From IMG/VR virus record IMGVR_UViG_3300043426_000266, positions 1 through 64,000 of that record: a stretch of DNA of 64,000 nt, one strand, 5' to 3'. Below are positions 32,862 to 48,276 of this stretch, piece after piece (positions within the stretch are counted from its first letter, which is position 1; each line of letters begins with the position of its first letter). Below the pieces are notes generated by a model. The model saw only the letters and a list, made by a program, of their open reading frames with translations, was not told the origin of the DNA and made no database searches. Made by a program: the position numbers and the translations under genes.

Positions 32862-32891
32862 ATAAAAGGGAGCCTAGGCTCCCTTTTATTT
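32860..32891. terminator. Perfect 32-bp palindromic bidirectional terminator
   Basis: AAATAAAAGGGAGCCTAGGCTCCCTTTTATTT between convergent genes. Confidence 0.85.
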
Positions 32892-35763: not shown

Positions 35764-37989
35764 ATGTCTCAGAAACTTCTTGAAGTCTACAAGACTTCGA
35801 CAATCGCATTGGCGCACAGTGTTGTGGTAAATCACCCTCATGTTGGAATGTCGATCAACAAGATGCTAAAAGAAAAAAAGTATGGTGTCTATACCAATGA
35901 ACATAACCGTTCAACTTGGAAAATGTACTTAAATATGGCTGGGTTATATCATCAATATGATCATGATCAAATTCATAAAATTAACGTGGAGCTTGGTTTG
36001 GGTCTAACGGATCCAACAATTAATCGTTCTAAAATGATTATTCGAGTTGCAGGTGATAGCGGTCAACTTGAACGAGAGTTTACGGTTGAAAATATTTCGT
36101 CTGAAACAGCAGATGTAAGTATCTCTAAAGAGTATCAGCCTGGAAGTCGTGCATATAATGAATTGGTTGGTGTGTACTCTGAGTTTGAGAATTTAATTCA
36201 GGGAATTTTACATCCGATTCCATTGGACGTGTCGACGAACGCTGATGAGTATGAAGTACTCCATGCTGGTGGATATTATAAAACTCGTTTAGATACTTTG
36301 AGTTCTCAATATGCGTATATTAAAAGTCAACGTTTGGTTGATCAACAAGCAACGCTTATTGAAGATTGGGAAGAAAGTTTAGTTGGTGATATAAATCACT
36401 TCACTAAAAACTTCTTTAGGCAACATTATAATCCAGTCTACGGTGAGTTTAATGATTTATACGTAGCACAAAGTTTAGGGTTATATTATTTGAATCTTCC
36501 AACTTTGATTATGCAATTGCGTTTAAATAAAGTTAAAACAAGAGAGACACATTCAACACATGTTCAATTATACCTTGATTCATTTTCCGGGTTAGGGCAA
36601 TATATCAGCTATCTAACTCGTGATCAAGTCATGTTTTTATATCGTAATCTAGATTGGCTAATTGCCAACTTTGGTAAGCAAAAGACATTTGATATACTGT
36701 TAGATGTGTTAATTTATTCCCGACGCATCCCAGCAATCTTTTATAACAGCATTCATCGTTTAGAGAATATGCCTGGACAACTTGAACCAGATACGCGGTT
36801 TACAAAAGAGTATGGTTTGGTTCGACCAATTGGTGATGGTAAAACAACTTTAACACCAGAGGAAATGGTGGAGATGATTATTAATGTTGCAAAACATAAT
36901 AGTCAAAATGTTGACTACCAACTTTATCGAATAGAAGATTTGTCTTTAAAATCCAATAGCAATTGGGTTAAAACCAAACTTGTACATACCAAGTACACAG
37001 ATTGGGGGATGCAAGTAAACGGCAGTTACGAGGAGTTCTTATTTTGTAACTGGGTTTACTCTGCAATGAAAGGGGAGTTTACAGGGTTGGTAACGGTCTT
37101 TACGCCTTATACAAATAACAGTATTCAGCTAACCATTAAGAATGCTTTAATTATGTTCTTGTTTAGTTATGCTAAAGGTTATTTAGGTAAAAACCCAAAT
37201 CTAATCAAATCACTATATGTTCACAACATCCCTAAAACAATTGCTGAAATTGACGGTGGTGAGAATTTACGTGGCTATATTAGTGATTCACGTTTTACAG
37301 AACAAGAATATTTGTTTTTAAGAAGCAAGTCCCCAGATAGCCGCCGTTACAATTCAACTTCTCAATTTTTAGCAGAGATTGAACAGCAATGGCGCAACTA
37401 TGTTGAAAGAACCTATGCTGTATATAAAGGCGTAGGAATTCGCGCGAATGGGCAGATGGATATGGTCGCAGCTTTAATGTACCATAATGCTAAGATTGAT
37501 ATTGATCTTGGGATGTCTTATCAACAATGGTTGGCAAAATTTGGAATTCGCTCTGAAGGAGAAGAGGTTGAATACTACCAACTTCTTTGTAATAGTGTTT
37601 ATGAAGCAGTGTTATTTCCAGCGGGAACGAAAAAAGATCGAATGGAAAAAACCCATCGAGCTTTGATTAATATTCTTCGTTTCTTCTCGAGTTACTCTAT
37701 TCAGTTTATTACCGAAACAAACTCATCTGAAGTTGTGAATGTAGGTACACGTGATGTGCGTTTAGAACACATCTCAACAAGCTTTACTTCCAAAGATGAT
37801 ATTTTTATTGCAAGATACCCGACTTACTTTACAAAGGCGAAAGCTGTTCAGGAAAGTAGTTTCAACGGACATCAGTTTAGTTACTGGAGTAGCGATGAGC
37901 GGGATAATCATTTGACTCAAGAACAGCTAAGATACCTAATTCTAACTGAACAGAATGATGGAATCCTTATTAAAGGAGGAGACGTATGA
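35764..37989 (+). CDS. Virion structural protein, baseplate-wedge-like
   Basis: 741 aa, directly before the tail fibre; KYYLNMAG.YH-like motif (KMYLNMAGLYH). Confidence 0.55.
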   Translation: MSQKLLEVYKTSTIALAHSVVVNHPHVGMSINKMLKEKKYGVYTNEHNRSTWKMYLNMAGLYHQYDHDQIHKINVELGLGLTDPTINRSKMIIRVAGDSGQLEREFTVENISSETADVSISKEYQPGSRAYNELVGVYSEFENLIQGILHPIPLDVSTNADEYEVLHAGGYYKTRLDTLSSQYAYIKSQRLVDQQATLIEDWEESLVGDINHFTKNFFRQHYNPVYGEFNDLYVAQSLGLYYLNLPTLIMQLRLNKVKTRETHSTHVQLYLDSFSGLGQYISYLTRDQVMFLYRNLDWLIANFGKQKTFDILLDVLIYSRRIPAIFYNSIHRLENMPGQLEPDTRFTKEYGLVRPIGDGKTTLTPEEMVEMIINVAKHNSQNVDYQLYRIEDLSLKSNSNWVKTKLVHTKYTDWGMQVNGSYEEFLFCNWVYSAMKGEFTGLVTVFTPYTNNSIQLTIKNALIMFLFSYAKGYLGKNPNLIKSLYVHNIPKTIAEIDGGENLRGYISDSRFTEQEYLFLRSKSPDSRRYNSTSQFLAEIEQQWRNYVERTYAVYKGVGIRANGQMDMVAALMYHNAKIDIDLGMSYQQWLAKFGIRSEGEEVEYYQLLCNSVYEAVLFPAGTKKDRMEKTHRALINILRFFSSYSIQFITETNSSEVVNVGTRDVRLEHISTSFTSKDDIFIARYPTYFTKAKAVQESSFNGHQFSYWSSDERDNHLTQEQLRYLILTEQNDGILIKGGDV

Positions 37990-40900
37990 GTAATAAACCG
38001 ATATCAAGCCTGGAGGTTCGTACCCAAGACTTGACAGGCGCAGACCTGATGTTGATCTCCCAGTTTACTGCGGCTGGTTGGAGATCTGCACAAGTAACTT
38101 TAGAAGACTTTTTTACTGAAATGTTTCAGCCTGGTTCTTCTGCTGGGCAGATCATTGTGAACATGCAAGCTGAGATTAATCAGTTAGATTCACGAATGGA
38201 TATGCATGAGCATCCAGAGCTCAATACCGCTGATCCAAATTATGATCCACACTTTGGGTTCTTCTTACGGTTAGTAACCAAAGTTGCATCGAATTCAGGA
38301 TTAGTTGGTGATGGTCGAGCGGCAACACCACTGGCTTTAGATTACACTTATCTAAATACAGTTTATGCTCGTTCGAGTACAATTGTTGATAACCTTACAT
38401 CAACTTCTGCAACAACTCCATTGTCAGCAAATATGGGTCGAGAATTAAATGTTGCTAAAACCAATATTTCTGAAACTCGTCAAAACTTCGGTGAAAACAT
38501 TGTTTCGTTGATTGCAACAACGGGTTATAATTTCAACAATGCTTTGCCTGGTGATTACGTCTATCTAAATAAGCAAACCGCAACCGCAGCCAACTCACCA
38601 CCATTTGAGTACTCCACCACGTTTACTGAATGTTCGATTAATACCAGCGGTCAGCGTTTTCAGATTGCCCGAGATTATCAAACCGGACAATTTGCTGTGC
38701 GTGCGTTACAAAGTTCCACTTGGAGTGCCTGGCGTAAACAGTTGATGGAAGGTGATGTGGGTGGTGGCAGTACCGTAGGTTCTGCTGATAAATTGACCAC
38801 GCCGCGTCGTATTAACAACGTGTTTTTTGACGGTACTCAAGATATTACCATTTATACTGATAAATTGAGCACGCCGCGTCGTATTAACAACGTGTTTTTT
38901 GACGGTACTCAAGATATTACCATTTCTGCTGCTAAATTGACCACGCCGCGTCGTATTAACAATGTTTTATTCGATGGTACGCAGGACATTACCATTTCTG
39001 CTGATAAATTGAGCACGCCGCGTCGTATTAACAATGTTTTATTCGATGGTACGCAGGACATTACCATTTATGCTGATCTTCCTTATAAGGGCGCAATCTC
39101 ACCTTCTGTGATTGATGCTACTGTTACCCCAGGGTATTATGGCATCAGCAATAACCCAGAAGGTTTCTTTGAGGTAAGAGTTGTTAATGATTTAGTATTA
39201 CAATACTATCATACAACGTATTACGCCACACCCCAAGGAGAGGCTTACCCGACTCGACACCTAAGCCGGATGAAGAAAGGGGTGGATGCTTGGACTGCTT
39301 GGCAAAGTGTTGGTCCAAAAATTGAATTTGCTTCAACTGGTGGCGTGGGCGTAGTTCAGTTAAATAACAGTTTAACTTCAACTGCTACCGACCAAGCTCT
39401 AACCGCGGCAATGGGTAAAGTATTAAAAGATACGAAAGTTGACATTACTGCATTAAGAGATGCGTTTGGTAATCGCCCAATAGACTTGATTGTTCCTGCG
39501 GGTTATAACTATAACAACATCATGCCGGGTGAATTTGTTTTTCATAACGACTCAACCCTCGGTACCAATGTCGTTAACCCACCCCCATTCAACACCTGTT
39601 CTGTCTATTGCGAACGTAGCTATACTGGGGCGGGTGAACGTACCGTTACTGCGCGGGACTATGCAACAGGTCGAATTGCAACTCGCGGTCGTAATAACAA
39701 TAGCTGGAGTGCTTGGCAAACACATTTGGTTGCGGTAGATGTCGCAAATGCAATTACGACGCATAAAGCTGAAACAGACCCACATCCCCAGTATGTGACT
39801 ATTGCTGAATTGGCTGCATCAACTACAGATGGTTTAACTGAACACGTATTGGATTTAAGTACCGCTGGTTTTGATGCCAATACTTATTATCCAGTTACAG
39901 TTGCAATTGCGAACAAAGGTCGTTGTAGTTTTGAAATTGATACCCCTTTGTCGTATGCAGCTGCCCCTTGGTCAACCCATGCTGGTGGTACAATTTCTGT
40001 AATGGCGAAGTGGAGCGAGTACTCGGCCGCGTGGGGTGCGAATAATATTGATAGAACAATCGATGTTGCAGGGTTTGCGCACTGTGTTAATAGTCCTGTA
40101 ATTTCAATTACTCAATTAACGAACTCATCAACTGTTGTGTTCTTCTTACGCGGTAACACTAAATATCGCGTACGGATGACGAAAACATTGGTTCCAGTGA
40201 TTCGTACTGCGTCGTATAGTATTAGTAGTCAAACTGTTGCGCCTAAGGTATTTGATAATAGTGCACCAATCAGTATTATGAATGATAAGATTGGACAATC
40301 TCATTTAACTGACCCCGATCCTCATCCTCAGTATCTATTGGCTAGCACCGGCTCTACTCAGTATTATCCTAAAACTGGTGGTACAGTCACGGGTGATATT
40401 GTTGCCGGTACACCAGCTGCGCCTAGAGCTGTTTATGCCTACGGCAACATTACTTCTGAAAAAACAGTAACGGGTCTTGATATAGTTGCTATAAATTCCT
40501 TGAAGTCTGTGGGCCGGGTAGAGGCGCGGTATTTAACCTTGCAAAATGCGGTCTACCCTAGTAAATTACAAATTACTCCAGGTCTCAACACAGTATCCTA
40601 TTCCGTGGTCGACCTATCCCCTCTTGAACAGGGTGAGCACGTGTTTTGGAACCCAATTAGGTCTACTTGGGGGTATGGGGATCTTTTTAGCGAACAAGCG
40701 GTTGATCTTCGTTGGGATGTGTCGAATACAACCACGGTCATCGGTGAGGTGGTGGCGAGTTATGTTGTCTTTAACTCTAAAGTGGATTGGTATGATGGTT
40801 CAGAGCAGCGTAATGTAAGATACTGTCAAGTTTCTGTTGATTATATTTTGTGGAATAATCCAGGCGAAACTAGTTCTAAATTCGTTTTCCCTCTTACTTT

Positions 40901-41102
40901 TGCGCTACCGCCAATTATTGTGGCCACTCGAAAAACCTGGGATAAAGATAGCGCAGGAACGATGAATGATGCTGATGGAGGTGTGCTTGTTCAATTTGCT
41001 AATACTGCGTATTGTTACATTTCTTGCCAGGTATTCAATCCTAATTCACAAGGCGGGTTACGCGGCTTTACATTACAAATCTCTGGATGGGTGTATGCAT
41101 AA
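37986..41102 (+). CDS. Long tail fibre protein
   Basis: KL.TPRRINNV.FDGTQDITI x4, DPHPQY x2, LTSTS..LSA.MG fibre repeats, WSAW modules. Confidence 0.85.
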   Translation: MSNKPISSLEVRTQDLTGADLMLISQFTAAGWRSAQVTLEDFFTEMFQPGSSAGQIIVNMQAEINQLDSRMDMHEHPELNTADPNYDPHFGFFLRLVTKVASNSGLVGDGRAATPLALDYTYLNTVYARSSTIVDNLTSTSATTPLSANMGRELNVAKTNISETRQNFGENIVSLIATTGYNFNNALPGDYVYLNKQTATAANSPPFEYSTTFTECSINTSGQRFQIARDYQTGQFAVRALQSSTWSAWRKQLMEGDVGGGSTVGSADKLTTPRRINNVFFDGTQDITIYTDKLSTPRRINNVFFDGTQDITISAAKLTTPRRINNVLFDGTQDITISADKLSTPRRINNVLFDGTQDITIYADLPYKGAISPSVIDATVTPGYYGISNNPEGFFEVRVVNDLVLQYYHTTYYATPQGEAYPTRHLSRMKKGVDAWTAWQSVGPKIEFASTGGVGVVQLNNSLTSTATDQALTAAMGKVLKDTKVDITALRDAFGNRPIDLIVPAGYNYNNIMPGEFVFHNDSTLGTNVVNPPPFNTCSVYCERSYTGAGERTVTARDYATGRIATRGRNNNSWSAWQTHLVAVDVANAITTHKAETDPHPQYVTIAELAASTTDGLTEHVLDLSTAGFDANTYYPVTVAIANKGRCSFEIDTPLSYAAAPWSTHAGGTISVMAKWSEYSAAWGANNIDRTIDVAGFAHCVNSPVISITQLTNSSTVVFFLRGNTKYRVRMTKTLVPVIRTASYSISSQTVAPKVFDNSAPISIMNDKIGQSHLTDPDPHPQYLLASTGSTQYYPKTGGTVTGDIVAGTPAAPRAVYAYGNITSEKTVTGLDIVAINSLKSVGRVEARYLTLQNAVYPSKLQITPGLNTVSYSVVDLSPLEQGEHVFWNPIRSTWGYGDLFSEQAVDLRWDVSNTTTVIGEVVASYVVFNSKVDWYDGSEQRNVRYCQVSVDYILWNNPGETSSKFVFPLTFALPPIIVATRKTWDKDSAGTMNDADGGVLVQFANTAYCYISCQVFNPNSQGGLRGFTLQISGWVYA
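38784..39077 (+). repeat. Four tandem 72-bp units
   Basis: Units start at 38784, 38856, 38928 and 39000. Confidence 0.95.
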
Positions 41103-44095: not shown

Positions 44096-44597
44096 TTTGG
44101 ATTTTAGTATCGAGAATCCAAAACAACATCTATGTTTAACTATTTTTGACGTTATTGGTTTTTTAAAAGATGTTAAACTTAATAATTTAAAAGATGAAGT
44201 AACATATGCAATCTTAGTAAACTACAATAGGCACTTAGAAGTTGAGTATCACATTGACGTTGAAATGGATGCTCAGGGCATCCGTCGAAAGTTCAACGAT
44301 TTACCCAACAATATGAAAGAGAAAATGACGAAGAAAGTAATCATCTACGATATGGATGCAAAATACTTTATTGAAGAATTATTTAATTTCATTGATGTTC
44401 AGCAAAGACACTACATTAAAGATGTTGGTAGAAATGGCGGTTGGTTAAATAGTGCCGGGATTACTTGTATTTTTATTGTTGTGACGATGTATATTATCTA
44501 TCATGCGAACCATTCTTATCGGGGCGCTAATGTTATCACAGTAGGTGATGACGTAATGAAAAGTCTTTTTGATTATTTATTCGCTTTAATCCAATAG
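44079..44597 (+). CDS. Hypothetical membrane protein
   Basis: Hydrophobic ITCIFIVVTMYIIY near the C-terminus. Confidence 0.65.
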   Translation: MGEESDLDFSIENPKQHLCLTIFDVIGFLKDVKLNNLKDEVTYAILVNYNRHLEVEYHIDVEMDAQGIRRKFNDLPNNMKEKMTKKVIIYDMDAKYFIEELFNFIDVQQRHYIKDVGRNGGWLNSAGITCIFIVVTMYIIYHANHSYRGANVITVGDDVMKSLFDYLFALIQ

Positions 44598-44618
44598 AGA
44601 GGGCTTGCCCTCTCTATT
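44593..44618. terminator. Terminator
   Basis: AATAGAGAGGGC-TT-GCCCTCTCTATT. Confidence 0.75.
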
Positions 44619-44667
44619 TCTTTTTATACGATTTAGTTTATTTTATGAGCTTAACGGAGATATCTCA

Positions 44668-46107
44668 ATGTCTGAAGATTTACAAAATATAAATTTATTA
44701 CCTGTAGCCAATCAACAAGATAACGTCTTTTCTGGTTCAGAGGGTGGGGATGCCGATACACCTTTATTGGTCTACCAAAGTAAAAAAGAAGTCGGTACGT
44801 ATATCGATCGTTTAAAGGCACTGCATACATCTTTAAAGAAAACTGACGCCCTACCTACGCAAATTATCTTTCCAGAACAAAACGAGCAAGCGCTTGAGCT
44901 TACCGCTAAATATGTCCACACCATTCGTTCACTAGTCGACTTACTGATGAAACATGGTTTAACAAAACAATTCGATTCTTATTCTTATCGTGTTGCACAT
45001 TTTCAGCATTTAAATGAGTGGTTGAATATTGTTGTACGGCTGCAATTCGCAACTGCTTTAAATGCAGTACGCAATACACTCAATGAAGCATTAGACGGTG
45101 ATGACCCATTTCAATGGGGTGTATTGGAGATTGATGATAAGGGTATCTATTCGATCGATGGTCAAGAACTAACATTTGGTGAAAAAGTTGATATCTTTAC
45201 AACCAGTGAAAAGGTTGTCAGTGGTGTGATCTTCGATTCACACGAAAGTTTAAATTGTAAAGCTTATGGTGAAGATACTCTACCTGTTGTTCACTATGAA
45301 ACGAGTGAATTAAAAAATCTCGATTACGACTCTATTCAAAAACGTTATGATTCAGCGATTTCTGAAAAAGAACATTTGTTGGGTGTAGACGCATGGTCAT
45401 TCTTTAATGTATTGCTTTACAAAAAACATTTACCTGAATCAAATCCAATTGAATTATGCAATAACTTATTATCAATGCAAGATCGTGACCCATCACTTAC
45501 TTCTTTTCAATATGAAAAAGATATTGAGCTCATTCGCGATTTAAACTTACCTTTTGGGGTTGAGCAGTTATTGGTTCCCGCGGTACAGTCGTATTTCTGT
45601 AAAAAGAAAGATCGACATGATGAGTTCATGGATTCAATTCGGTTAATGAAAACCAATGAAAAAGATTTTCGTAAAAAGGTAAAGGCTGGTGCGGGTGATG
45701 CTGTTCTTCTTGGGTTTGCTGACCTTCTTCAATATCTTGCCGGACAACGTAGTAAACTAGTTAAATTACGTCTTGTACTTGCTTCTGGAGAGGTCGTTGA
45801 TGCCGCAACAACTGATCGTCAATTTACCATGGAGAAGTTACACATTTTCAACCGCTACAATATCTCTCAGGTGTTGTTTACTGGAATAAAATTTAAAGCG
45901 AAAAAGAAAGGCAAGATTAAAGAAGACCATTTTGAGTTGACTGATCGAATGATCAAAGATACTGATGTTGTTGCAGTAATCATGAGTGAAGCGAAGTTTT
46001 ATTACTTTGATGAAACCGCAACAGAAGACAATGATCAACACTTTGCAATGTACATGAAATTGCGACGTGATTATAAAGCAATCGCTAAAATGGAGAAGGA
46101 GGCTTAA
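44668..46107 (+). CDS. Conserved hypothetical late protein
   Basis: Start moved to MSEDLQ (GGAG RBS; TATG 24 nt upstream). Confidence 0.7.
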   Translation: MSEDLQNINLLPVANQQDNVFSGSEGGDADTPLLVYQSKKEVGTYIDRLKALHTSLKKTDALPTQIIFPEQNEQALELTAKYVHTIRSLVDLLMKHGLTKQFDSYSYRVAHFQHLNEWLNIVVRLQFATALNAVRNTLNEALDGDDPFQWGVLEIDDKGIYSIDGQELTFGEKVDIFTTSEKVVSGVIFDSHESLNCKAYGEDTLPVVHYETSELKNLDYDSIQKRYDSAISEKEHLLGVDAWSFFNVLLYKKHLPESNPIELCNNLLSMQDRDPSLTSFQYEKDIELIRDLNLPFGVEQLLVPAVQSYFCKKKDRHDEFMDSIRLMKTNEKDFRKKVKAGAGDAVLLGFADLLQYLAGQRSKLVKLRLVLASGEVVDAATTDRQFTMEKLHIFNRYNISQVLFTGIKFKAKKKGKIKEDHFELTDRMIKDTDVVAVIMSEAKFYYFDETATEDNDQHFAMYMKLRRDYKAIAKMEKEA

Positions 46108-46145: not shown

Positions 46146-47012
46146 ATGAGTACGCAAGCTTCAAAATTCACATTCTTCTCCTTAGGGGAAGCAGCGGGGA
46201 ATTTAACCTTTGGGCAAAGAGAATTAAAAGTTATTCCAAAAGAGTCATTCTCTCAGTTAGATGGGGAGGTGACCGATGCAATGGCGGAGTTAGAAGCAGA
46301 AGGTGTTGATAAGGATGGAAATACTTATACCTCTAAGGTAGGTACTTCAAATAGTATAACCGCGACCTATTTATCCTTTGACCCTCATAAACCATTCCCG
46401 TCGCTCATCCGTCGAGGGGAGAAGGTAATTATTTATCGGTTAGCTGATACCGATAAGTACTACTGGCAACCTTTAGGTTTAGACGATACGACAAGACGAC
46501 GGGATATACTTGTTATTGCTGTTCCTAACTCTCCTAAAGAAAATGAGAATTCAAGAACACCAGAGACTGCGTATTACATTGAAGTCAATACGATTGATAA
46601 ACATATTAGTGTTCAAACCAATAAAAATGACGGTGAGCCGTTTGCCTACAGTATTCAGGTGAACACTAAAGAAGGTTTCTTTTCGGTTATGGATGATGCT
46701 GGTAATTTCATTCAACTGGTTTCTTCTGAGGATAGAATTACAACTCAAAACGCAACTGGGTCAGAAATAACAATTGAGAAAGGCAAAGGGCTGTGGAAGA
46801 CAAGTGAGTCTGTAACAATTGAAACGAAAACATTTACCGTTAAGGCCTCAAAAGCTGATTTCCAAACCCAGACATGGCAGATGAGCGGAAGCGCCTATAA
46901 TGTAAAAGCCTCTTCCGAGTTTACTGGTTCTTTGAAAAATAATGGGATTAATGTTGGTTCAACACACTACCACATCGGCAACTTAGGTCGTCCAACATCA
47001 AGTCCAATGTAG
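46146..47012 (+). CDS. Central spike / puncturing protein (phiKZ gp164-like)
   Basis: OB-fold-like N-terminus (RRGEKVII), beta-helix-like repeats, terminal THYHIG...TS.P iron-binding HxH motif; close to sbcC. Confidence 0.75.
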   Translation: MSTQASKFTFFSLGEAAGNLTFGQRELKVIPKESFSQLDGEVTDAMAELEAEGVDKDGNTYTSKVGTSNSITATYLSFDPHKPFPSLIRRGEKVIIYRLADTDKYYWQPLGLDDTTRRRDILVIAVPNSPKENENSRTPETAYYIEVNTIDKHISVQTNKNDGEPFAYSIQVNTKEGFFSVMDDAGNFIQLVSSEDRITTQNATGSEITIEKGKGLWKTSESVTIETKTFTVKASKADFQTQTWQMSGSAYNVKASSEFTGSLKNNGINVGSTHYHIGNLGRPTSSPM

Positions 47013-47020
47013 AGGTTAGT

Positions 47021-47995
47021 ATGGAAGTTAATGATTTTATTGGAATAAGCAAATTTCTAGGTTTTACAGGACCTATGATTGGTAAGAATAAAGTAATGTC
47101 AGGTGGCATCTACTTTCCAGATATGAGTAAGGTAGATAAATTTGATATTAAAGATTGGGGTGTAGTGTTTGATGCATCCATGGTAAAGTTGATCAATATC
47201 AACATGGGTTACAAATCAACTTCTTTACCTTCTACAAAAAACAGTATTGCCGTGGGAAACCTCACCAACCCAACTGGTGACTCAACCTTACAACTGGGTT
47301 GGTTTGATCATTACAACGTTTCATTTAACGGGTGGTACAAACGTGCTGATGAACGTGATATGTTGAATAAACAAACAATCACGTTAGGATTAGACTTCAT
47401 TTTAACACTAGATCCAATTAAATATACAGCAGCATATCGAGAAGAAGTTTTAGAAAATACACTTCCTTTTCCACATCCTGCAATGGAACCTGATGCGCCA
47501 AAACAAGAAGACTTTATTTCCAAGGATGCAAAAGGAAGGGATGTTCTTGATCAAGCTTCATGGGATGAGGCGGTAAACTCCTTTACTGAGAAAATGGCTG
47601 CCTATACTGAATATGAAACCAGCGTTCTTGACATTCACCAACAGCGTTTAGCGCAATATCCAGGAATAACAAATTCATCCCCTGCTCAACAAGTTACACA
47701 CTTCGGGTTTGTTGGTGAAGATGTAGAATCTAAAGCAAGTTCAATTGATTCGTCATTTCGTCCTTTATTAAAACACGATGAGTTTAATGGGTATGATGTT
47801 AATTATTTAGATTACAATCAACTCATCGCACCTTTGGTAAAAGCAGTTCAGGAGTTGCATGAAAAACACGTTATACTTGAACAAAAACATGATCAACTTA
47901 GAATAGAATTTGATGAATTAAAAGCAGACCACACCGCTAGAATAGAAACATTAGAAATAGATATGGCACTTGTAAAAACGACACTTGGATTATAA
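47021..47995 (+). CDS. Protein with a peptidase S74 intramolecular-chaperone-like domain, catalytic dyad absent
   Basis: ADERDM..LGLDFI..L.PIKY, HFGFVGEDV, LDYNQLIAPLVKAVQEL, then a coiled coil. Confidence 0.7.
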   Translation: MEVNDFIGISKFLGFTGPMIGKNKVMSGGIYFPDMSKVDKFDIKDWGVVFDASMVKLININMGYKSTSLPSTKNSIAVGNLTNPTGDSTLQLGWFDHYNVSFNGWYKRADERDMLNKQTITLGLDFILTLDPIKYTAAYREEVLENTLPFPHPAMEPDAPKQEDFISKDAKGRDVLDQASWDEAVNSFTEKMAAYTEYETSVLDIHQQRLAQYPGITNSSPAQQVTHFGFVGEDVESKASSIDSSFRPLLKHDEFNGYDVNYLDYNQLIAPLVKAVQELHEKHVILEQKHDQLRIEFDELKADHTARIETLEIDMALVKTTLGL

Positions 47996-48002
47996 TCCGC
48001 AT

Positions 48003-48030
48003 AAATAAAGGAGCCTAGGCTCCTTTATTT
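48003..48030. terminator. Perfect 28-bp palindromic bidirectional terminator
   Basis: AAATAAAGGAGCCTAGGCTCCTTTATTT. Confidence 0.85.
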
Positions 48031-48036
48031 GATATG

Positions 48037-48192
48037 CTAACCGTAGCACTGAATTACCTTATCCGCCAGTCTATTAAACAGTGGCAAAGAAATCCCATGT
48101 CGTTTACGAAATTCAATATTCTCTTTCGAATTTGGAACCAATTGCTGTTTAATATCCTTAGGATTCTTTTGACTTTTAACTGTTTGAGTCAT
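48037..48192 (-). CDS. 51-aa basic microprotein (not in ORF track)
   Basis: GGAGGT RBS; MTQTVKSQKNPKDIKQQLVPNSKENIEFRKRHGISLPLFNRLADKVIQCYG. Confidence 0.6.
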   Translation of the reverse strand: MTQTVKSQKNPKDIKQQLVPNSKENIEFRKRHGISLPLFNRLADKVIQCYG

Positions 48193-48276
48193 GTTCACCT
48201 CCGTTCAAATGATATAATGAGTTTGTTTATTTCTACATTCTTGAACGAAGTAAATTCGAACAAGACTGACTAAGTT

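What the first reader, a model, noticed from the sequence alone, without database searches (positions are those of the whole stretch)
47021..47995. Non-cleaving S74 chaperone domain beside the central spike gene
Intramolecular chaperones self-cleave using S-D-x-x-x-K. Here the equivalent positions read A-D-E-R-D-M (Ala109 at 47345, Met114 at 47360), so both dyad residues are lost while downstream motifs (LGLDFI, GF..EDV, YNQLIAPLVKAVQEL) and the coiled coil remain. The N-terminal part is only ~108 aa and there is an ~85-aa acidic insert. Inference: the domain is retained as a permanent trimerisation or structural element, or works in trans as a folding chaperone for the spike or fibres.
Basis: partly seen in the sequence, partly recalled or inferred. 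Interest (0 to 1): 0.6.

Follow-up and report, generated by a model that had tools for sequence, protein, structure and literature searches.

The report
Dyad-less chaperone domain kept in fibre
A giant phage related to phiKZ carries, right after its tail-spike gene, an optional 1-kb gene for a short fibre-like protein whose self-cleaving "intramolecular chaperone" domain has lost both catalytic residues, so it most likely stays attached as a permanent building block.

Summary
ORF 47021-47995 (+) encodes 324 aa, and codons 47345-47362 read A-D-E-R-D-M. In 124 of 154 related domains these positions read S-D-x-R-D-K, and the Ser is position 1 of Pfam Peptidase_S74. Pfam itself does not call the domain. 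A profile search (2262 hits), an AlphaFold model (pLDDT 87.5) and four structure searches all place it in the intramolecular-chaperone fold.

Only the Ser and Lys are lost. R108, D110 and D113 are invariant in 154/154 domains. All 15 orthologues lack the dyad. Five of them are longer and carry a second, canonical S74 domain at their own C-terminus, so the first domain is an internal, retained module. Dyad state changed at least 3-5 times on the domain tree.

The gene follows the phiKZ gp164-type spike gene by 8-21 nt in all six informative loci. It is nevertheless dispensable. A contig with a 99 %-identical spike lacks exactly 46988-47991, and both forms occur in one wastewater run.

Best reading: an accessory, spike-linked short trimeric fibre with a non-cleaving pseudo-protease domain. 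A trans-chaperone role is less likely. Its place in the virion is unknown. It is a new variant of a known kind, of moderate interest.

The parts
46146..47012 (+). Central spike gene (288 aa), homologue of phiKZ gp164. It carries its own C-terminal NGINVGSTHYH apex motif (46941-46973).
   Evidence: PDB 6orj PHIKZ164 E=1.9e-41; phrog_3216 E=9e-66; H274 and H276 invariant in 35 homologues.
47012..47015 (+). GAGG ribosome-binding site, overlapping the spike stop codon and 5 nt before the ATG. The spike stop and the next start are 8 nt apart.
   Evidence: Read directly from the sequence. The same tight spacing (9-21 nt) is seen in five orthologous loci.
47021..47995 (+). Gene for the 324-aa fibre-like protein with a dyad-less S74-type intramolecular chaperone domain.
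47021..47194 (+). Residues 1-58: conserved N-terminal region found only in orthologues. Presumed attachment domain (inferred).
   Evidence: Found only in the 15 orthologues. D5, F6, G17, G28, V38, D45, W46 and F50 are conserved. Model pLDDT 45-72.
47195..47344 (+). Residues 59-108: short beta-roll resembling a YadA head (NSIAVGN...LQLGW), the usual stalk in front of an intramolecular chaperone domain.
   Evidence: Foldseek 3s6l YadA-like head, prob 0.98 over 58 residues. YadA_head gives sub-threshold Pfam hits in orthologues. PDB profile hits to YadA/EibD heads.
47345..47362 (+). A109-D-E-R-D-M114, the degenerate S-D-x-x-x-K site. Both dyad residues are replaced.
47345..47440 (+). Residues 109-140: first half of the chaperone domain (Pfam S74 profile positions 1-32), including LGLDFI.
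   Evidence: Canonical relatives match PF13884 positions 1-32 here. Alignment.
47441..47695 (+). Residues 141-225: acidic, proline-rich insert followed by a long helix (178-215). A trait of the subfamily.
   Evidence: Composition; insert lengths in relatives; pLDDT 84-97.
47696..47812 (+). Residues 226-264: second half of the chaperone domain (HFGFVGEDV ... GYDVNYLD).
   Evidence: A2 consensus HHGLIAQEV...GGxDV. PDB profile hits to 6f45 and 7dc3 lie over this part.
47813..47992 (+). Residues 265-324: one long helix with a heptad pattern (presumed trimeric coiled coil). It runs about 35 aa beyond the usual end of a canonical domain and ends in a conserved LGL.
   Evidence: Model helix 265-321, pLDDT 96-98; heptads; tail lengths; LGL end in the short orthologues.
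46988..47991 (.). Presence/absence cassette of 1004 nt: the last 8 spike codons plus the whole fibre-like gene. In the gene-less form it is replaced by 24 nt.
   Evidence: Contig L017 (spike 99 % identical) matches the window up to 46987 and again from 47992. Run X7 holds the same joint as well as the gene-bearing form.
48007..48026 (.). Palindromic hairpin AAAGGAGCCTAGGCTCCTTT followed by a T-rich run. Probable two-way terminator, closing the spike-fibre unit and the converging small ORF 48198..48037.
   Evidence: dG -19.8 kcal/mol, z -5.65; sequence; second copy at 32866-32885 between converging genes.

Best explanation
The gene encodes an accessory, fibre-like structural protein of a phiKZ-like jumbo phage. 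It is co-transcribed with the central spike gene.

Its architecture is: a lineage-specific N-terminal region (1-58), a short beta-roll (59-108), an S74-type intramolecular chaperone domain (109-264) and a long coiled-coil helix (265-321).

The chaperone domain is a non-peptidase homologue. The nucleophile Ser and the general-base Lys have been replaced by Ala and Met. The invariant Arg/Asp residues around them, and the rest of the fold, are kept.

Proposed mechanism, step by step:
- Shown: the domain is a homologue of the chaperone fold.
- Shown: the dyad is absent.
- Inferred from the family: the domain nucleates trimerisation from its C-terminal helices and clamps the preceding beta-roll.
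- Inferred from S-to-A mutants of T5 pb1 and Bd3182: without Ser and Lys the peptide bond before residue 109 is not cut.
- Inferred from the orthologues that carry the domain in mid-protein: the domain therefore remains a permanent knob or joint of the mature trimer.

The gene is an optional cassette. It is always placed behind the spike gene when present, but absent from close relatives. This fits an add-on fibre (host-range or adsorption accessory) rather than an essential assembly factor. That last step is the least certain.
For: Homology and fold
- A profile of the protein finds 2262 proteins at E <= 1e-3.
- Canonical hits pass Pfam PF13884, with profile position 1 on the residue aligned to A109.
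- AlphaFold2 with 149 sequences gives pLDDT 87.5 and pTM 0.76.
- An unbiased search of 48,161 PDB chains ranks MyRF ICA 7dc3 first (Z 7.2, 134 residues, 2.8 A) and T5 pb1 4uw8 second (Z 6.6). 3gud (Z 5.9) and 3gw6 (Z 5.7) also appear, among trivial coiled coils.
- BFVD gives 32 hits at E <= 1e-3, nearly all named S74 or intramolecular chaperone.
- The four nearest ESM Atlas clusters shown (one per set of Pfam families, out of the 30 nearest models) carry PF13884 in 99-100 % of their members.

Selective loss of the dyad
- R108, D110 and D113 are invariant in 154/154 domains and R112 in 151/154. Ser and Lys are the residues missing.
- All 15 orthologues lack the dyad, with A/L/C/N/D/S at the first site and M/I/K at the second. 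They form one clade with 99 % support.

Retention
- P0010, P0011, P0013, P0014 and P0015 continue beyond this domain and end in a second domain that passes PF13884 with SDARLK, SDMRLK or SDARIK.
- P0031, an unrelated fibre, shows the same layout.
- Ser-to-Ala mutants fold and stay uncleaved (PMC4690869; PMC10769870).

Link to the spike
- The gene lies directly downstream of a gp164 homologue in the window and in L004, L005, L014, L015 and L016, although the flanks differ.
- A terminator-like hairpin follows the gene.

Selection
- The gene is intact in contigs from four wastewater studies, with no indels. There are 5 synonymous and 5 non-synonymous differences, none at codons 109 or 114.
Against: - No experiment shows that the protein is uncleaved, trimeric or in the virion.
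- Pfam does not call the domain.
- The complex prediction of the spike C-terminal part with the protein's N-terminal part gave no answer, so there is no support for a physical contact.
- The gene is absent from phages with 50-99 % identical spikes. It is therefore not needed for a viable particle, and could also be a non-structural accessory.
- No cultured phage has an orthologue of the N-terminal region, so no virion proteome can be consulted.
- The short form has no recognisable receptor-binding tip.
Confidence: 0.6

Rival explanations
1. Trans-acting assembly chaperone. The protein is not part of the virion. It uses its chaperone-like domain to help the triple beta-helix of the neighbouring spike, or of the tail fibres, to fold, and then leaves.
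For: - The gene sits 8 nt behind the spike gene in one transcription unit, and this pairing is kept in six loci.
- The parent family chaperones triple beta-helices (PMC3742443, PMC4690869).
- Separate chaperone genes downstream of fibre genes are known in other phages (PMC10579305, abstract).
- The cassette carries the last 8 spike codons with it.
Against: - Spikes that are 99 %, 72 % and 50-60 % identical exist in genomes without the gene.
- The protein has its own beta-roll in the client position.
- Five orthologues are full fibres with their own terminal cleaving S74 domain.
- The record holds no other S74-like protein and no paralogue.
- The complex prediction gave no answer, which counts neither way.
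Confidence: 0.12
2. Decaying remnant. The short form is what is left of a longer fibre (such as P0013 or P0014) after loss of the distal part. It has no function of its own and is on its way to deletion.
For: - There is a presence/absence polymorphism among near-identical genomes.
- The short form matches the predicted mature part of P0014.
- It has no recognisable receptor-binding tip.
- The differences among close variants are half non-synonymous.
Against: - Short forms of 319-337 aa occur in at least six lineages that are only 36-43 % identical, and all keep an open frame and a conserved LGL end.
- About 20 columns are invariant across the 14 full-length rows aligned (query, P0001 and 12 orthologues).
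- The gene is intact, without indels, in four independent studies.
- Five non-synonymous to five synonymous differences still means a ratio well below 1 per site (my estimate, not computed with a model).
Confidence: 0.1
3. The protein still cleaves itself, by a chemistry other than the Ser-Lys dyad, or at another bond.
For: - The residues flanking the site (R108, D110, R112, D113) are fully conserved.
- Some relatives have possible alternative nucleophiles: Cys in P0006 and in Aeromonas phage ACP1_0237, Asn in P0008, P0012 and LucasX.
Against: - The residue at position 109 is Ala here and Leu in P0002, P0011 and P0014. None of these can act as a nucleophile.
- The same flanking residues are conserved in cleaving members, and in T5 pb1 they are described as part of the site geometry, not as nucleophiles (PMC4690869).
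- S-to-A mutants do not cleave (PMC4690869, PMC10769870).
- In long orthologues, cleavage here would cut the fibre in two.
Confidence: 0.05

Closest known systems
C-terminal intramolecular chaperone domain of coliphage K1F endosialidase (PDB 3gw6), the founding member of Peptidase_S74
   Same: Same fold (Z 5.7, 123 residues aligned, model 88-292 to chain 889-1063). It follows a beta-helical stalk and ends in helices. It also carries a long extra loop inside the domain (T977-H1026, PMC3742443).
   Different: K1F has the Ser911-Lys916 dyad and releases the domain. Here the two residues are Ala and Met, the domain has a 35-aa longer coiled coil, and the part in front of it is only 108 aa.
Intramolecular chaperone of phage T5 L-shaped tail fibre pb1 (PDB 4uw8, S1264A mutant)
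   Same: Z 6.6 over 116 residues. The crystallised S1264A protein is an engineered counterpart of this natural Ala variant: folded, trimeric and uncleaved (PMC4690869).
   Different: In T5 the uncleaved state is artificial and masks the receptor-binding tip. Here the uncleaved state appears to be the native, selected one.
ICA domain of the eukaryotic myelin regulatory factor MyRF (PDB 7dc3)
   Same: Best structural match (Z 7.2, 134 of 147 residues, 2.8 A; Foldseek prob 1.0). MyRF also has the domain in mid-protein, with more sequence after it, like the long orthologues.
   Different: MyRF keeps Ser and Lys and must cleave to act (PMC3742443). It is a membrane-bound transcription factor, not a virion protein.
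Xanthomonas jumbo phage proteins RTH11 WJJ55129 (430 aa) and LucasX LUCX_296 (428 aa)
   Same: Closest proteins in cultured phages (26-28 % identity over 64-65 % of the query; the top BFVD hit is a 428-aa protein). They have the same long insert and the same loss of the dyad: A-D-V-R-D-M in RTH11 and N-D-A-R-D-F in LucasX.
   Different: Their N-terminal halves are different, and they do not lie behind the spike gene. One is annotated as hypothetical and the other only as 'tail fiber domain-containing'.
phiKZ gp163.1 / 201phi2-1 gp248, the PAAR-type spike tip
   Same: It occupies the same genomic slot: the gene directly downstream of the gp164-type spike, on the same strand.
   Different: There is no sequence or fold relation. 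PF05488 gives no hit in the record. The window's spike has its own HxH apex. gp163.1 is a monomeric 88-aa cone, whereas this is a 324-aa fibre-like protein.
C-terminal 'fin' of the P22 tailspike
   Same: An auto-chaperone that is not cleaved off after folding, as stated in PMC4690869 and PMC3357383. It is a functional precedent for a retained chaperone.
   Different: It is an unrelated fold, not an S74 homologue.

Membership tests
Pfam PF13884 Peptidase_S74 / MEROPS S74 (self-cleaving intramolecular chaperone) | Match to the PF13884 profile at or above the gathering score (22 bits) | tested here: not met
   No hit at E <= 1 on the protein and none in the 205-kb record. Orthologue P0016 (Ser kept) reaches 21.4 bits and P0012 reaches E = 0.05.
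Pfam PF13884 Peptidase_S74 / MEROPS S74 | Demonstrable homology to bona fide members | tested here: met
   The profile search finds 2262 proteins. Canonical hits P0018, P0020, P0025 and P0033 pass PF13884 at 35-47 bits, with profile position 1 on the column of A109.
Pfam PF13884 Peptidase_S74 / MEROPS S74 | Fold of the intramolecular chaperone domain | tested here: met
   7dc3 Z 7.2, 4uw8 Z 6.6, 3gud Z 5.9, 3gw6 Z 5.7. BFVD gives 32 hits at E <= 1e-3, nearly all named S74 or ICA. The four Atlas clusters shown carry PF13884 in 99-100 % of members. The Z values are middling. The case rests on all four solved families being retrieved together.
Pfam PF13884 Peptidase_S74 / MEROPS S74 | Nucleophile Ser at the cleavage site | tested here: not met
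   Ala109 (GCT, 47345-47347), against Ser in 124 of 154 aligned domains.
Pfam PF13884 Peptidase_S74 / MEROPS S74 | General-base Lys five residues after the Ser | tested here: not met
   Met114 (ATG, 47360-47362).
Pfam PF13884 Peptidase_S74 / MEROPS S74 | Autoproteolytic release of the domain after trimerisation | not testable with these tools
   Needs expression and SDS-PAGE or mass spectrometry. Non-cleavage is inferred from the S-to-A mutants in PMC4690869 and PMC10769870.
Pfam PF13884 Peptidase_S74 / MEROPS S74 | Domain at the extreme C-terminus, behind a trimeric beta-helical stalk | tested here: inconclusive
   A beta-roll precedes it. The domain is the last one in this protein, but it is extended: 45 aa follow the L279 position, against a median of 15 in canonical members. 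In five orthologues it is internal.
Pfam PF13884 Peptidase_S74 / MEROPS S74 | Homotrimer | not tested
The heptad pattern of helix 265-321 is compatible with a trimer.
PAAR / spike-tip proteins (PF05488; phiKZ gp163.1) | PAAR-motif fold capping the spike | tested here: not met
   No PF05488 match in the record. The model is a fibre-like S74 fold. Only the genomic position is shared.

The most novel reading that the evidence does not exclude
In one clade of phiKZ-like jumbo phages, the slot behind the spike gene holds a swappable cassette for a trimeric fibre that docks on the spike complex. In phiKZ the same slot encodes the PAAR-type spike tip. The ex-protease domain of the fibre has become a permanent trimer clamp. 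Gain, loss or exchange of the cassette, which comes with the last codons of the spike, would then toggle adsorption or host range among otherwise identical phages. More broadly, dyad-less S74 domains would be a recurrent and so far undescribed class of internal 'knot' modules in phage fibres.
Probability: 0.2. Interest if true: 0.65.

Novelty: new variant of a known kind. Interest (0 to 1): 0.5.

Why it matters
The S74 intramolecular chaperone is treated in the literature as a folding sensor that always cuts itself off. Its Ser and Lys are described as absolutely conserved or required (PMC3742443, PMC7824862).

Here a whole clade, and several other lineages, have dropped exactly these two residues and kept everything else. 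In some proteins the dyad-less copy sits next to a working copy. This is a natural experiment that separates the chaperone or trimerisation role from the protease role.

Three practical consequences follow.
- The domain can be reused as a stable structural module.
- Annotation pipelines miss such copies (Pfam gives no hit) or may wrongly predict cleavage.
- For people who engineer receptor-binding proteins, it offers a naturally non-cleaving trimerisation cap.

The precise presence/absence polymorphism behind the spike gene also gives a ready pair of natural variants for testing what the protein does.

Tried and rejected
- **Pfam and PDB by sequence.** Pfam on the protein gave nothing useful. 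A PDB search with the single sequence gave only chance hits.
- **Phage nucleotide search.** megablast against 50,697 phage records found no match.
- **First fold.** The first AlphaFold run used 3 sequences and was unusable (pLDDT 41.6). It was replaced by the 149-sequence run.
- **Foldseek against PDB.** It gave only weak E-values, best 0.016 for 7dc3, because of the insert and the long helix. The search that does not rely on Foldseek, and BFVD, were needed.
- **Complex prediction.** Spike residues 120-288 x3 with fibre residues 1-110 x3 gave 'no answer', ipSAE 0.00. This is no evidence either way. The partner's own fold was uncertain in that run.
- **PAAR-like spike tip.** Considered and rejected: no PAAR match and a different fold.
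- **Paralogues in the genome.** None found.
- **ESM Atlas feature search with residues 1-108.** Only leads below 0.9.
- **Literature.** Five full-text searches found no paper describing natural S74 domains without the dyad. The library lacks most subscription journals, so this is not proof that none exists.
- **RNA runs.** The 'RNA' runs that hold the gene are probably DNA by their records, so they say nothing about expression.

Full report
**What is there**

The window is the first 64 kb of a 205-kb viral record. Three results mark it as a phiKZ-like jumbo phage:
- a 758-aa major head protein (phrog_3231);
- a phiKZ-type polymerase subunit and virion proteins;
- a spike whose best solved relative is phiKZ gp164 (PDB 6orj, E = 1.9e-41).

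ORF 47021-47995 (+) is real. It has an ATG start and a GAGG 5 nt upstream, and it begins 8 nt after the spike stop codon. A strong hairpin follows it (dG -19.8 kcal/mol, z -5.65), then a T-rich run. Spike and ORF therefore look like the end of one transcription unit.

**The observation**

I built a profile from the protein and its two word-search relatives and searched 1.84 billion representatives. It found 2262 proteins at E <= 1e-3.

Aligning the best 150, plus three proteins of cultured phages, back to the profile gives an unambiguous register. The family reads QNRSDxRDKxDIxDTxLGLDFI and the query reads YKRADERDMLNKQTITLGLDFI. At the two positions, 124 of 154 domains have Ser and Lys. R108, D110 and D113 are invariant in all 154, and R112 in 151.

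Canonical members (P0018, P0020, P0025, P0033) pass Pfam PF13884, with profile position 1 on that Ser. So A109 and M114 do stand where the catalytic dyad should be. The alignment does not place the dyad elsewhere.

Pfam itself gives no hit on the query or anywhere in the record. Orthologues that keep the Ser only just miss the cut-off (P0016, 21.4 against 22 bits).

**Fold**

With a 149-sequence alignment, AlphaFold2 gives pLDDT 87.5 and pTM 0.76. The model has four parts:
- a poorly defined N-terminal region (1-58);
- a short beta-roll (59-108);
- the chaperone domain, with an inserted hairpin and helix;
- one long helix (265-321).

A search of 48,161 PDB representatives that does not rely on Foldseek ranks MyRF ICA first (7dc3, Z 7.2, 134 residues at 2.8 A) and T5 pb1 with its chaperone second (4uw8, Z 6.6). 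GA-1/phi29-type 3gud (Z 5.9) and K1F 3gw6 (Z 5.7) appear among otherwise trivial coiled-coil matches.

These Z values are middling on their own. However, all four solved chaperone families are retrieved together. BFVD adds 32 hits at E <= 1e-3, almost all named S74 or 'intramolecular chaperone auto-processing'. The four ESM Atlas clusters listed, one per set of Pfam families out of the 30 nearest models, carry PF13884 in 99-100 % of their members. The beta-roll resembles YadA-type heads.

**The insert**

Residues 141-225 are indeed acidic (16 D/E, 6 K/R). Cleaving relatives carry inserts of 11-111 aa at the same point, and about 17 of them are as long as this one. Pfam splits their match into two stretches for that reason. 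K1F also has an extended loop inside its domain (PMC3742443). The insert is therefore a subfamily trait, not a sign of the non-cleaving state.

What does go with loss of the dyad is a longer C-terminal helix. In the 22 dyad-less domains with the longest tails, this protein among them, 25-50 residues follow the L279 position, against a median of 15 in canonical domains. The remaining four dyad-less domains have 10-18.

**Orthologues show a retained domain**

Fifteen proteins share the N-terminal region as well, and all lack the dyad. They have A, L, C, N, D or S at the first site and M, I or once K at the second. They form one clade with 99 % support.

Five of them (P0010, P0011, P0013, P0014, P0015) are longer. 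After the coiled coil they continue into more fibre and end in a second domain that passes PF13884 with a canonical SDARLK, SDMRLK or SDARIK. In these proteins the first domain is internal. It cannot be a leaving group without cutting the fibre in two, while the working protease sits at the true C-terminus.

P0014 is telling. Its terminal S74 follows the coiled coil directly, and its predicted mature product (about 316 aa) has the length of the window protein. P0012 and P0016 instead end in about 150-aa domains without S74.

The family thus has a constant proximal part, which includes the dyad-less domain, and a variable distal tip. That is the usual design of phage fibres. An unrelated 859-aa protein (P0031) shows the same pair: an internal dyad-less domain plus a terminal canonical one.

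On a tree of the 149 domains, built without the two dyad columns, dyad state needs at least 5 changes. Well-supported branches force 3 of them. Among cultured phages, Xanthomonas phages RTH11 (A-D-V-R-D-M) and LucasX (N-D-A-R-D-F) have lost the dyad too. Aeromonas phage ACP1 has Cys-Lys.

**Why non-cleavage is the likely outcome**

The literature describes Ser and Lys as the catalytic dyad, absolutely conserved in the ICA domains aligned (PMC3742443) and required for release (PMC7824862). Ser-to-Ala mutants of T5 pb1 (S1264A) and Bdellovibrio Bd3182 (S782A) fold, and the T5 mutant crystallised as a trimer, but both stay unprocessed (PMC4690869, PMC10769870).

The natural Ala109 (Leu in P0002, P0011 and P0014) offers no nucleophile. 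This step is an inference. It has not been measured.

**Genomic context**

In phiKZ-type phage PA7 and in 201phi2-1, the gene directly after the spike gene encodes a small protein of about 88 aa. In 201phi2-1 it is annotated as a PAAR-motif protein. In phiKZ it is the monomeric spike tip gp163.1 (PMC13250141).

In the window's clade every spike ends in its own NG(I/V)NVGxTHxH motif, and no PAAR match exists in the record. When present, the fibre-like gene occupies that slot. It lies 8-21 nt behind a gp164 homologue in the window and in L004, L005, L014, L015 and L016, although the flanking genes differ.

Yet it is dispensable. Syntenic relatives with spikes 50-72 % identical go straight from the spike gene to a small converging ORF and then the SbcC-like gene.

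Contig L017 comes from another sample and has a 99 %-identical spike. It matches the window up to 46987 and again from 47992, with 24 other bases in between. One wastewater run (X7) holds both forms. The indel of 1004 nt takes the last eight spike codons with it: RPTSSPM with the gene, NPTSPPQG without.

Contigs from four wastewater studies hold the gene intact. They show no indels and ten differences, five of them synonymous, none at codons 109 or 114.

**Interpretation**

The best-supported reading is an accessory, spike-linked, short trimeric fibre. Its S74-type domain is a non-peptidase homologue kept as a permanent trimerisation and structural module.

The trans-chaperone alternative is weakened in three ways:
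- near-identical spikes do without the gene;
- the protein has its own client-like beta-roll;
- some orthologues are complete fibres.

A decaying remnant is unlikely. The short form is kept in several lineages that are only 36-43 % identical, with about 20 invariant columns and a conserved LGL end.

Where the protein sits is unknown. A complex prediction of the spike C-terminal part with the protein's N-terminal part gave no answer, which counts neither way. No cultured phage has an orthologue of the N-terminal region.

**Novelty**

The domain family, its fold and its role are known. Five full-text searches found no description of the following, though the library is incomplete:
- natural, recurrent loss of exactly the dyad with retention of the domain;
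- the tandem layout of a dead internal copy and a live terminal copy;
- the placement of such a gene as an optional cassette in the spike-tip slot of phiKZ-like phages.

I rate it a new variant of a known kind, of moderate interest.

Noticed in passing
window 32866-32885 and 48007-48026: The palindrome GGAGCCTAGGCTCC, with A/T-rich flanks, occurs twice. Both copies lie between converging genes (0 expected by chance). In public contigs the depth jumps about 2- to 50-fold, depending on the run, exactly at 47966-48047, and many contigs break there. It is a repeated terminator-like element and forms the right-hand edge of the cassette.
   Followed up: partly
window 46941-47012; L014:428-1450: Spikes of this clade carry their own C-terminal NG(I/V)NVGxTHxH apex, whereas phiKZ uses the separate tip protein gp163.1. 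No PAAR match exists in the 205-kb record. In contig L014 the spike is split into a 259-aa ORF and a 74-aa ORF, and the 74-aa piece carries the apex. This may be a real split or a frameshift.
   Followed up: partly
window 46988-47012 versus L017:2190-2216: The cassette brings a different spike C-terminus with it (RPTSSPM with the gene, NPTSPPQG without). Five fibre-linked spikes end in (R/K)P(T/V)SxPx. This could be hitch-hiking at a recombination joint or a hint of a contact. The sample is too small to tell.
   Followed up: partly
window 47867-47932 (residues 283, 290, 304): Three histidines sit at core 'a' positions of the presumed trimeric coiled coil. H283 and H290 are kept in P0002 and P0008. 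They may form a metal-binding or pH-sensitive layer. This was not examined.
   Followed up: no
L002:832-3702 (Aeromonas phage ACP1_0237), P0006, P0047: Some relatives have Cys in place of the nucleophile Ser. ACP1_0237 reads C-D-A-R-D-K, a possible Cys-Lys version of the self-cleaving site at the end of a 957-aa fibre.
   Followed up: no
window 48037-48198 (-): A small ORF (53 aa) converges on the same hairpin. A 48-54-aa gene sits at the same place and on the same strand in relatives L009-L012 and L015, so it is probably a real gene of unknown function.
   Followed up: no
window 44593-44668: A strong terminator-like hairpin (11 pairs, 44593-44618) overlaps the listed TTG start (44605) of the 500-aa ORF upstream of the spike. 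The true start is more likely the ATG at 44665 (MSEDLQ...). This would be the start of the unit that ends after the fibre-like gene.
   Followed up: no
window 37986-41102 (+): A 1038-aa protein with several tail-fibre PHROG hits is the phage's obvious long fibre. It has no S74-like domain, so the protein studied here holds the only copy of the fold in the record.
   Followed up: partly
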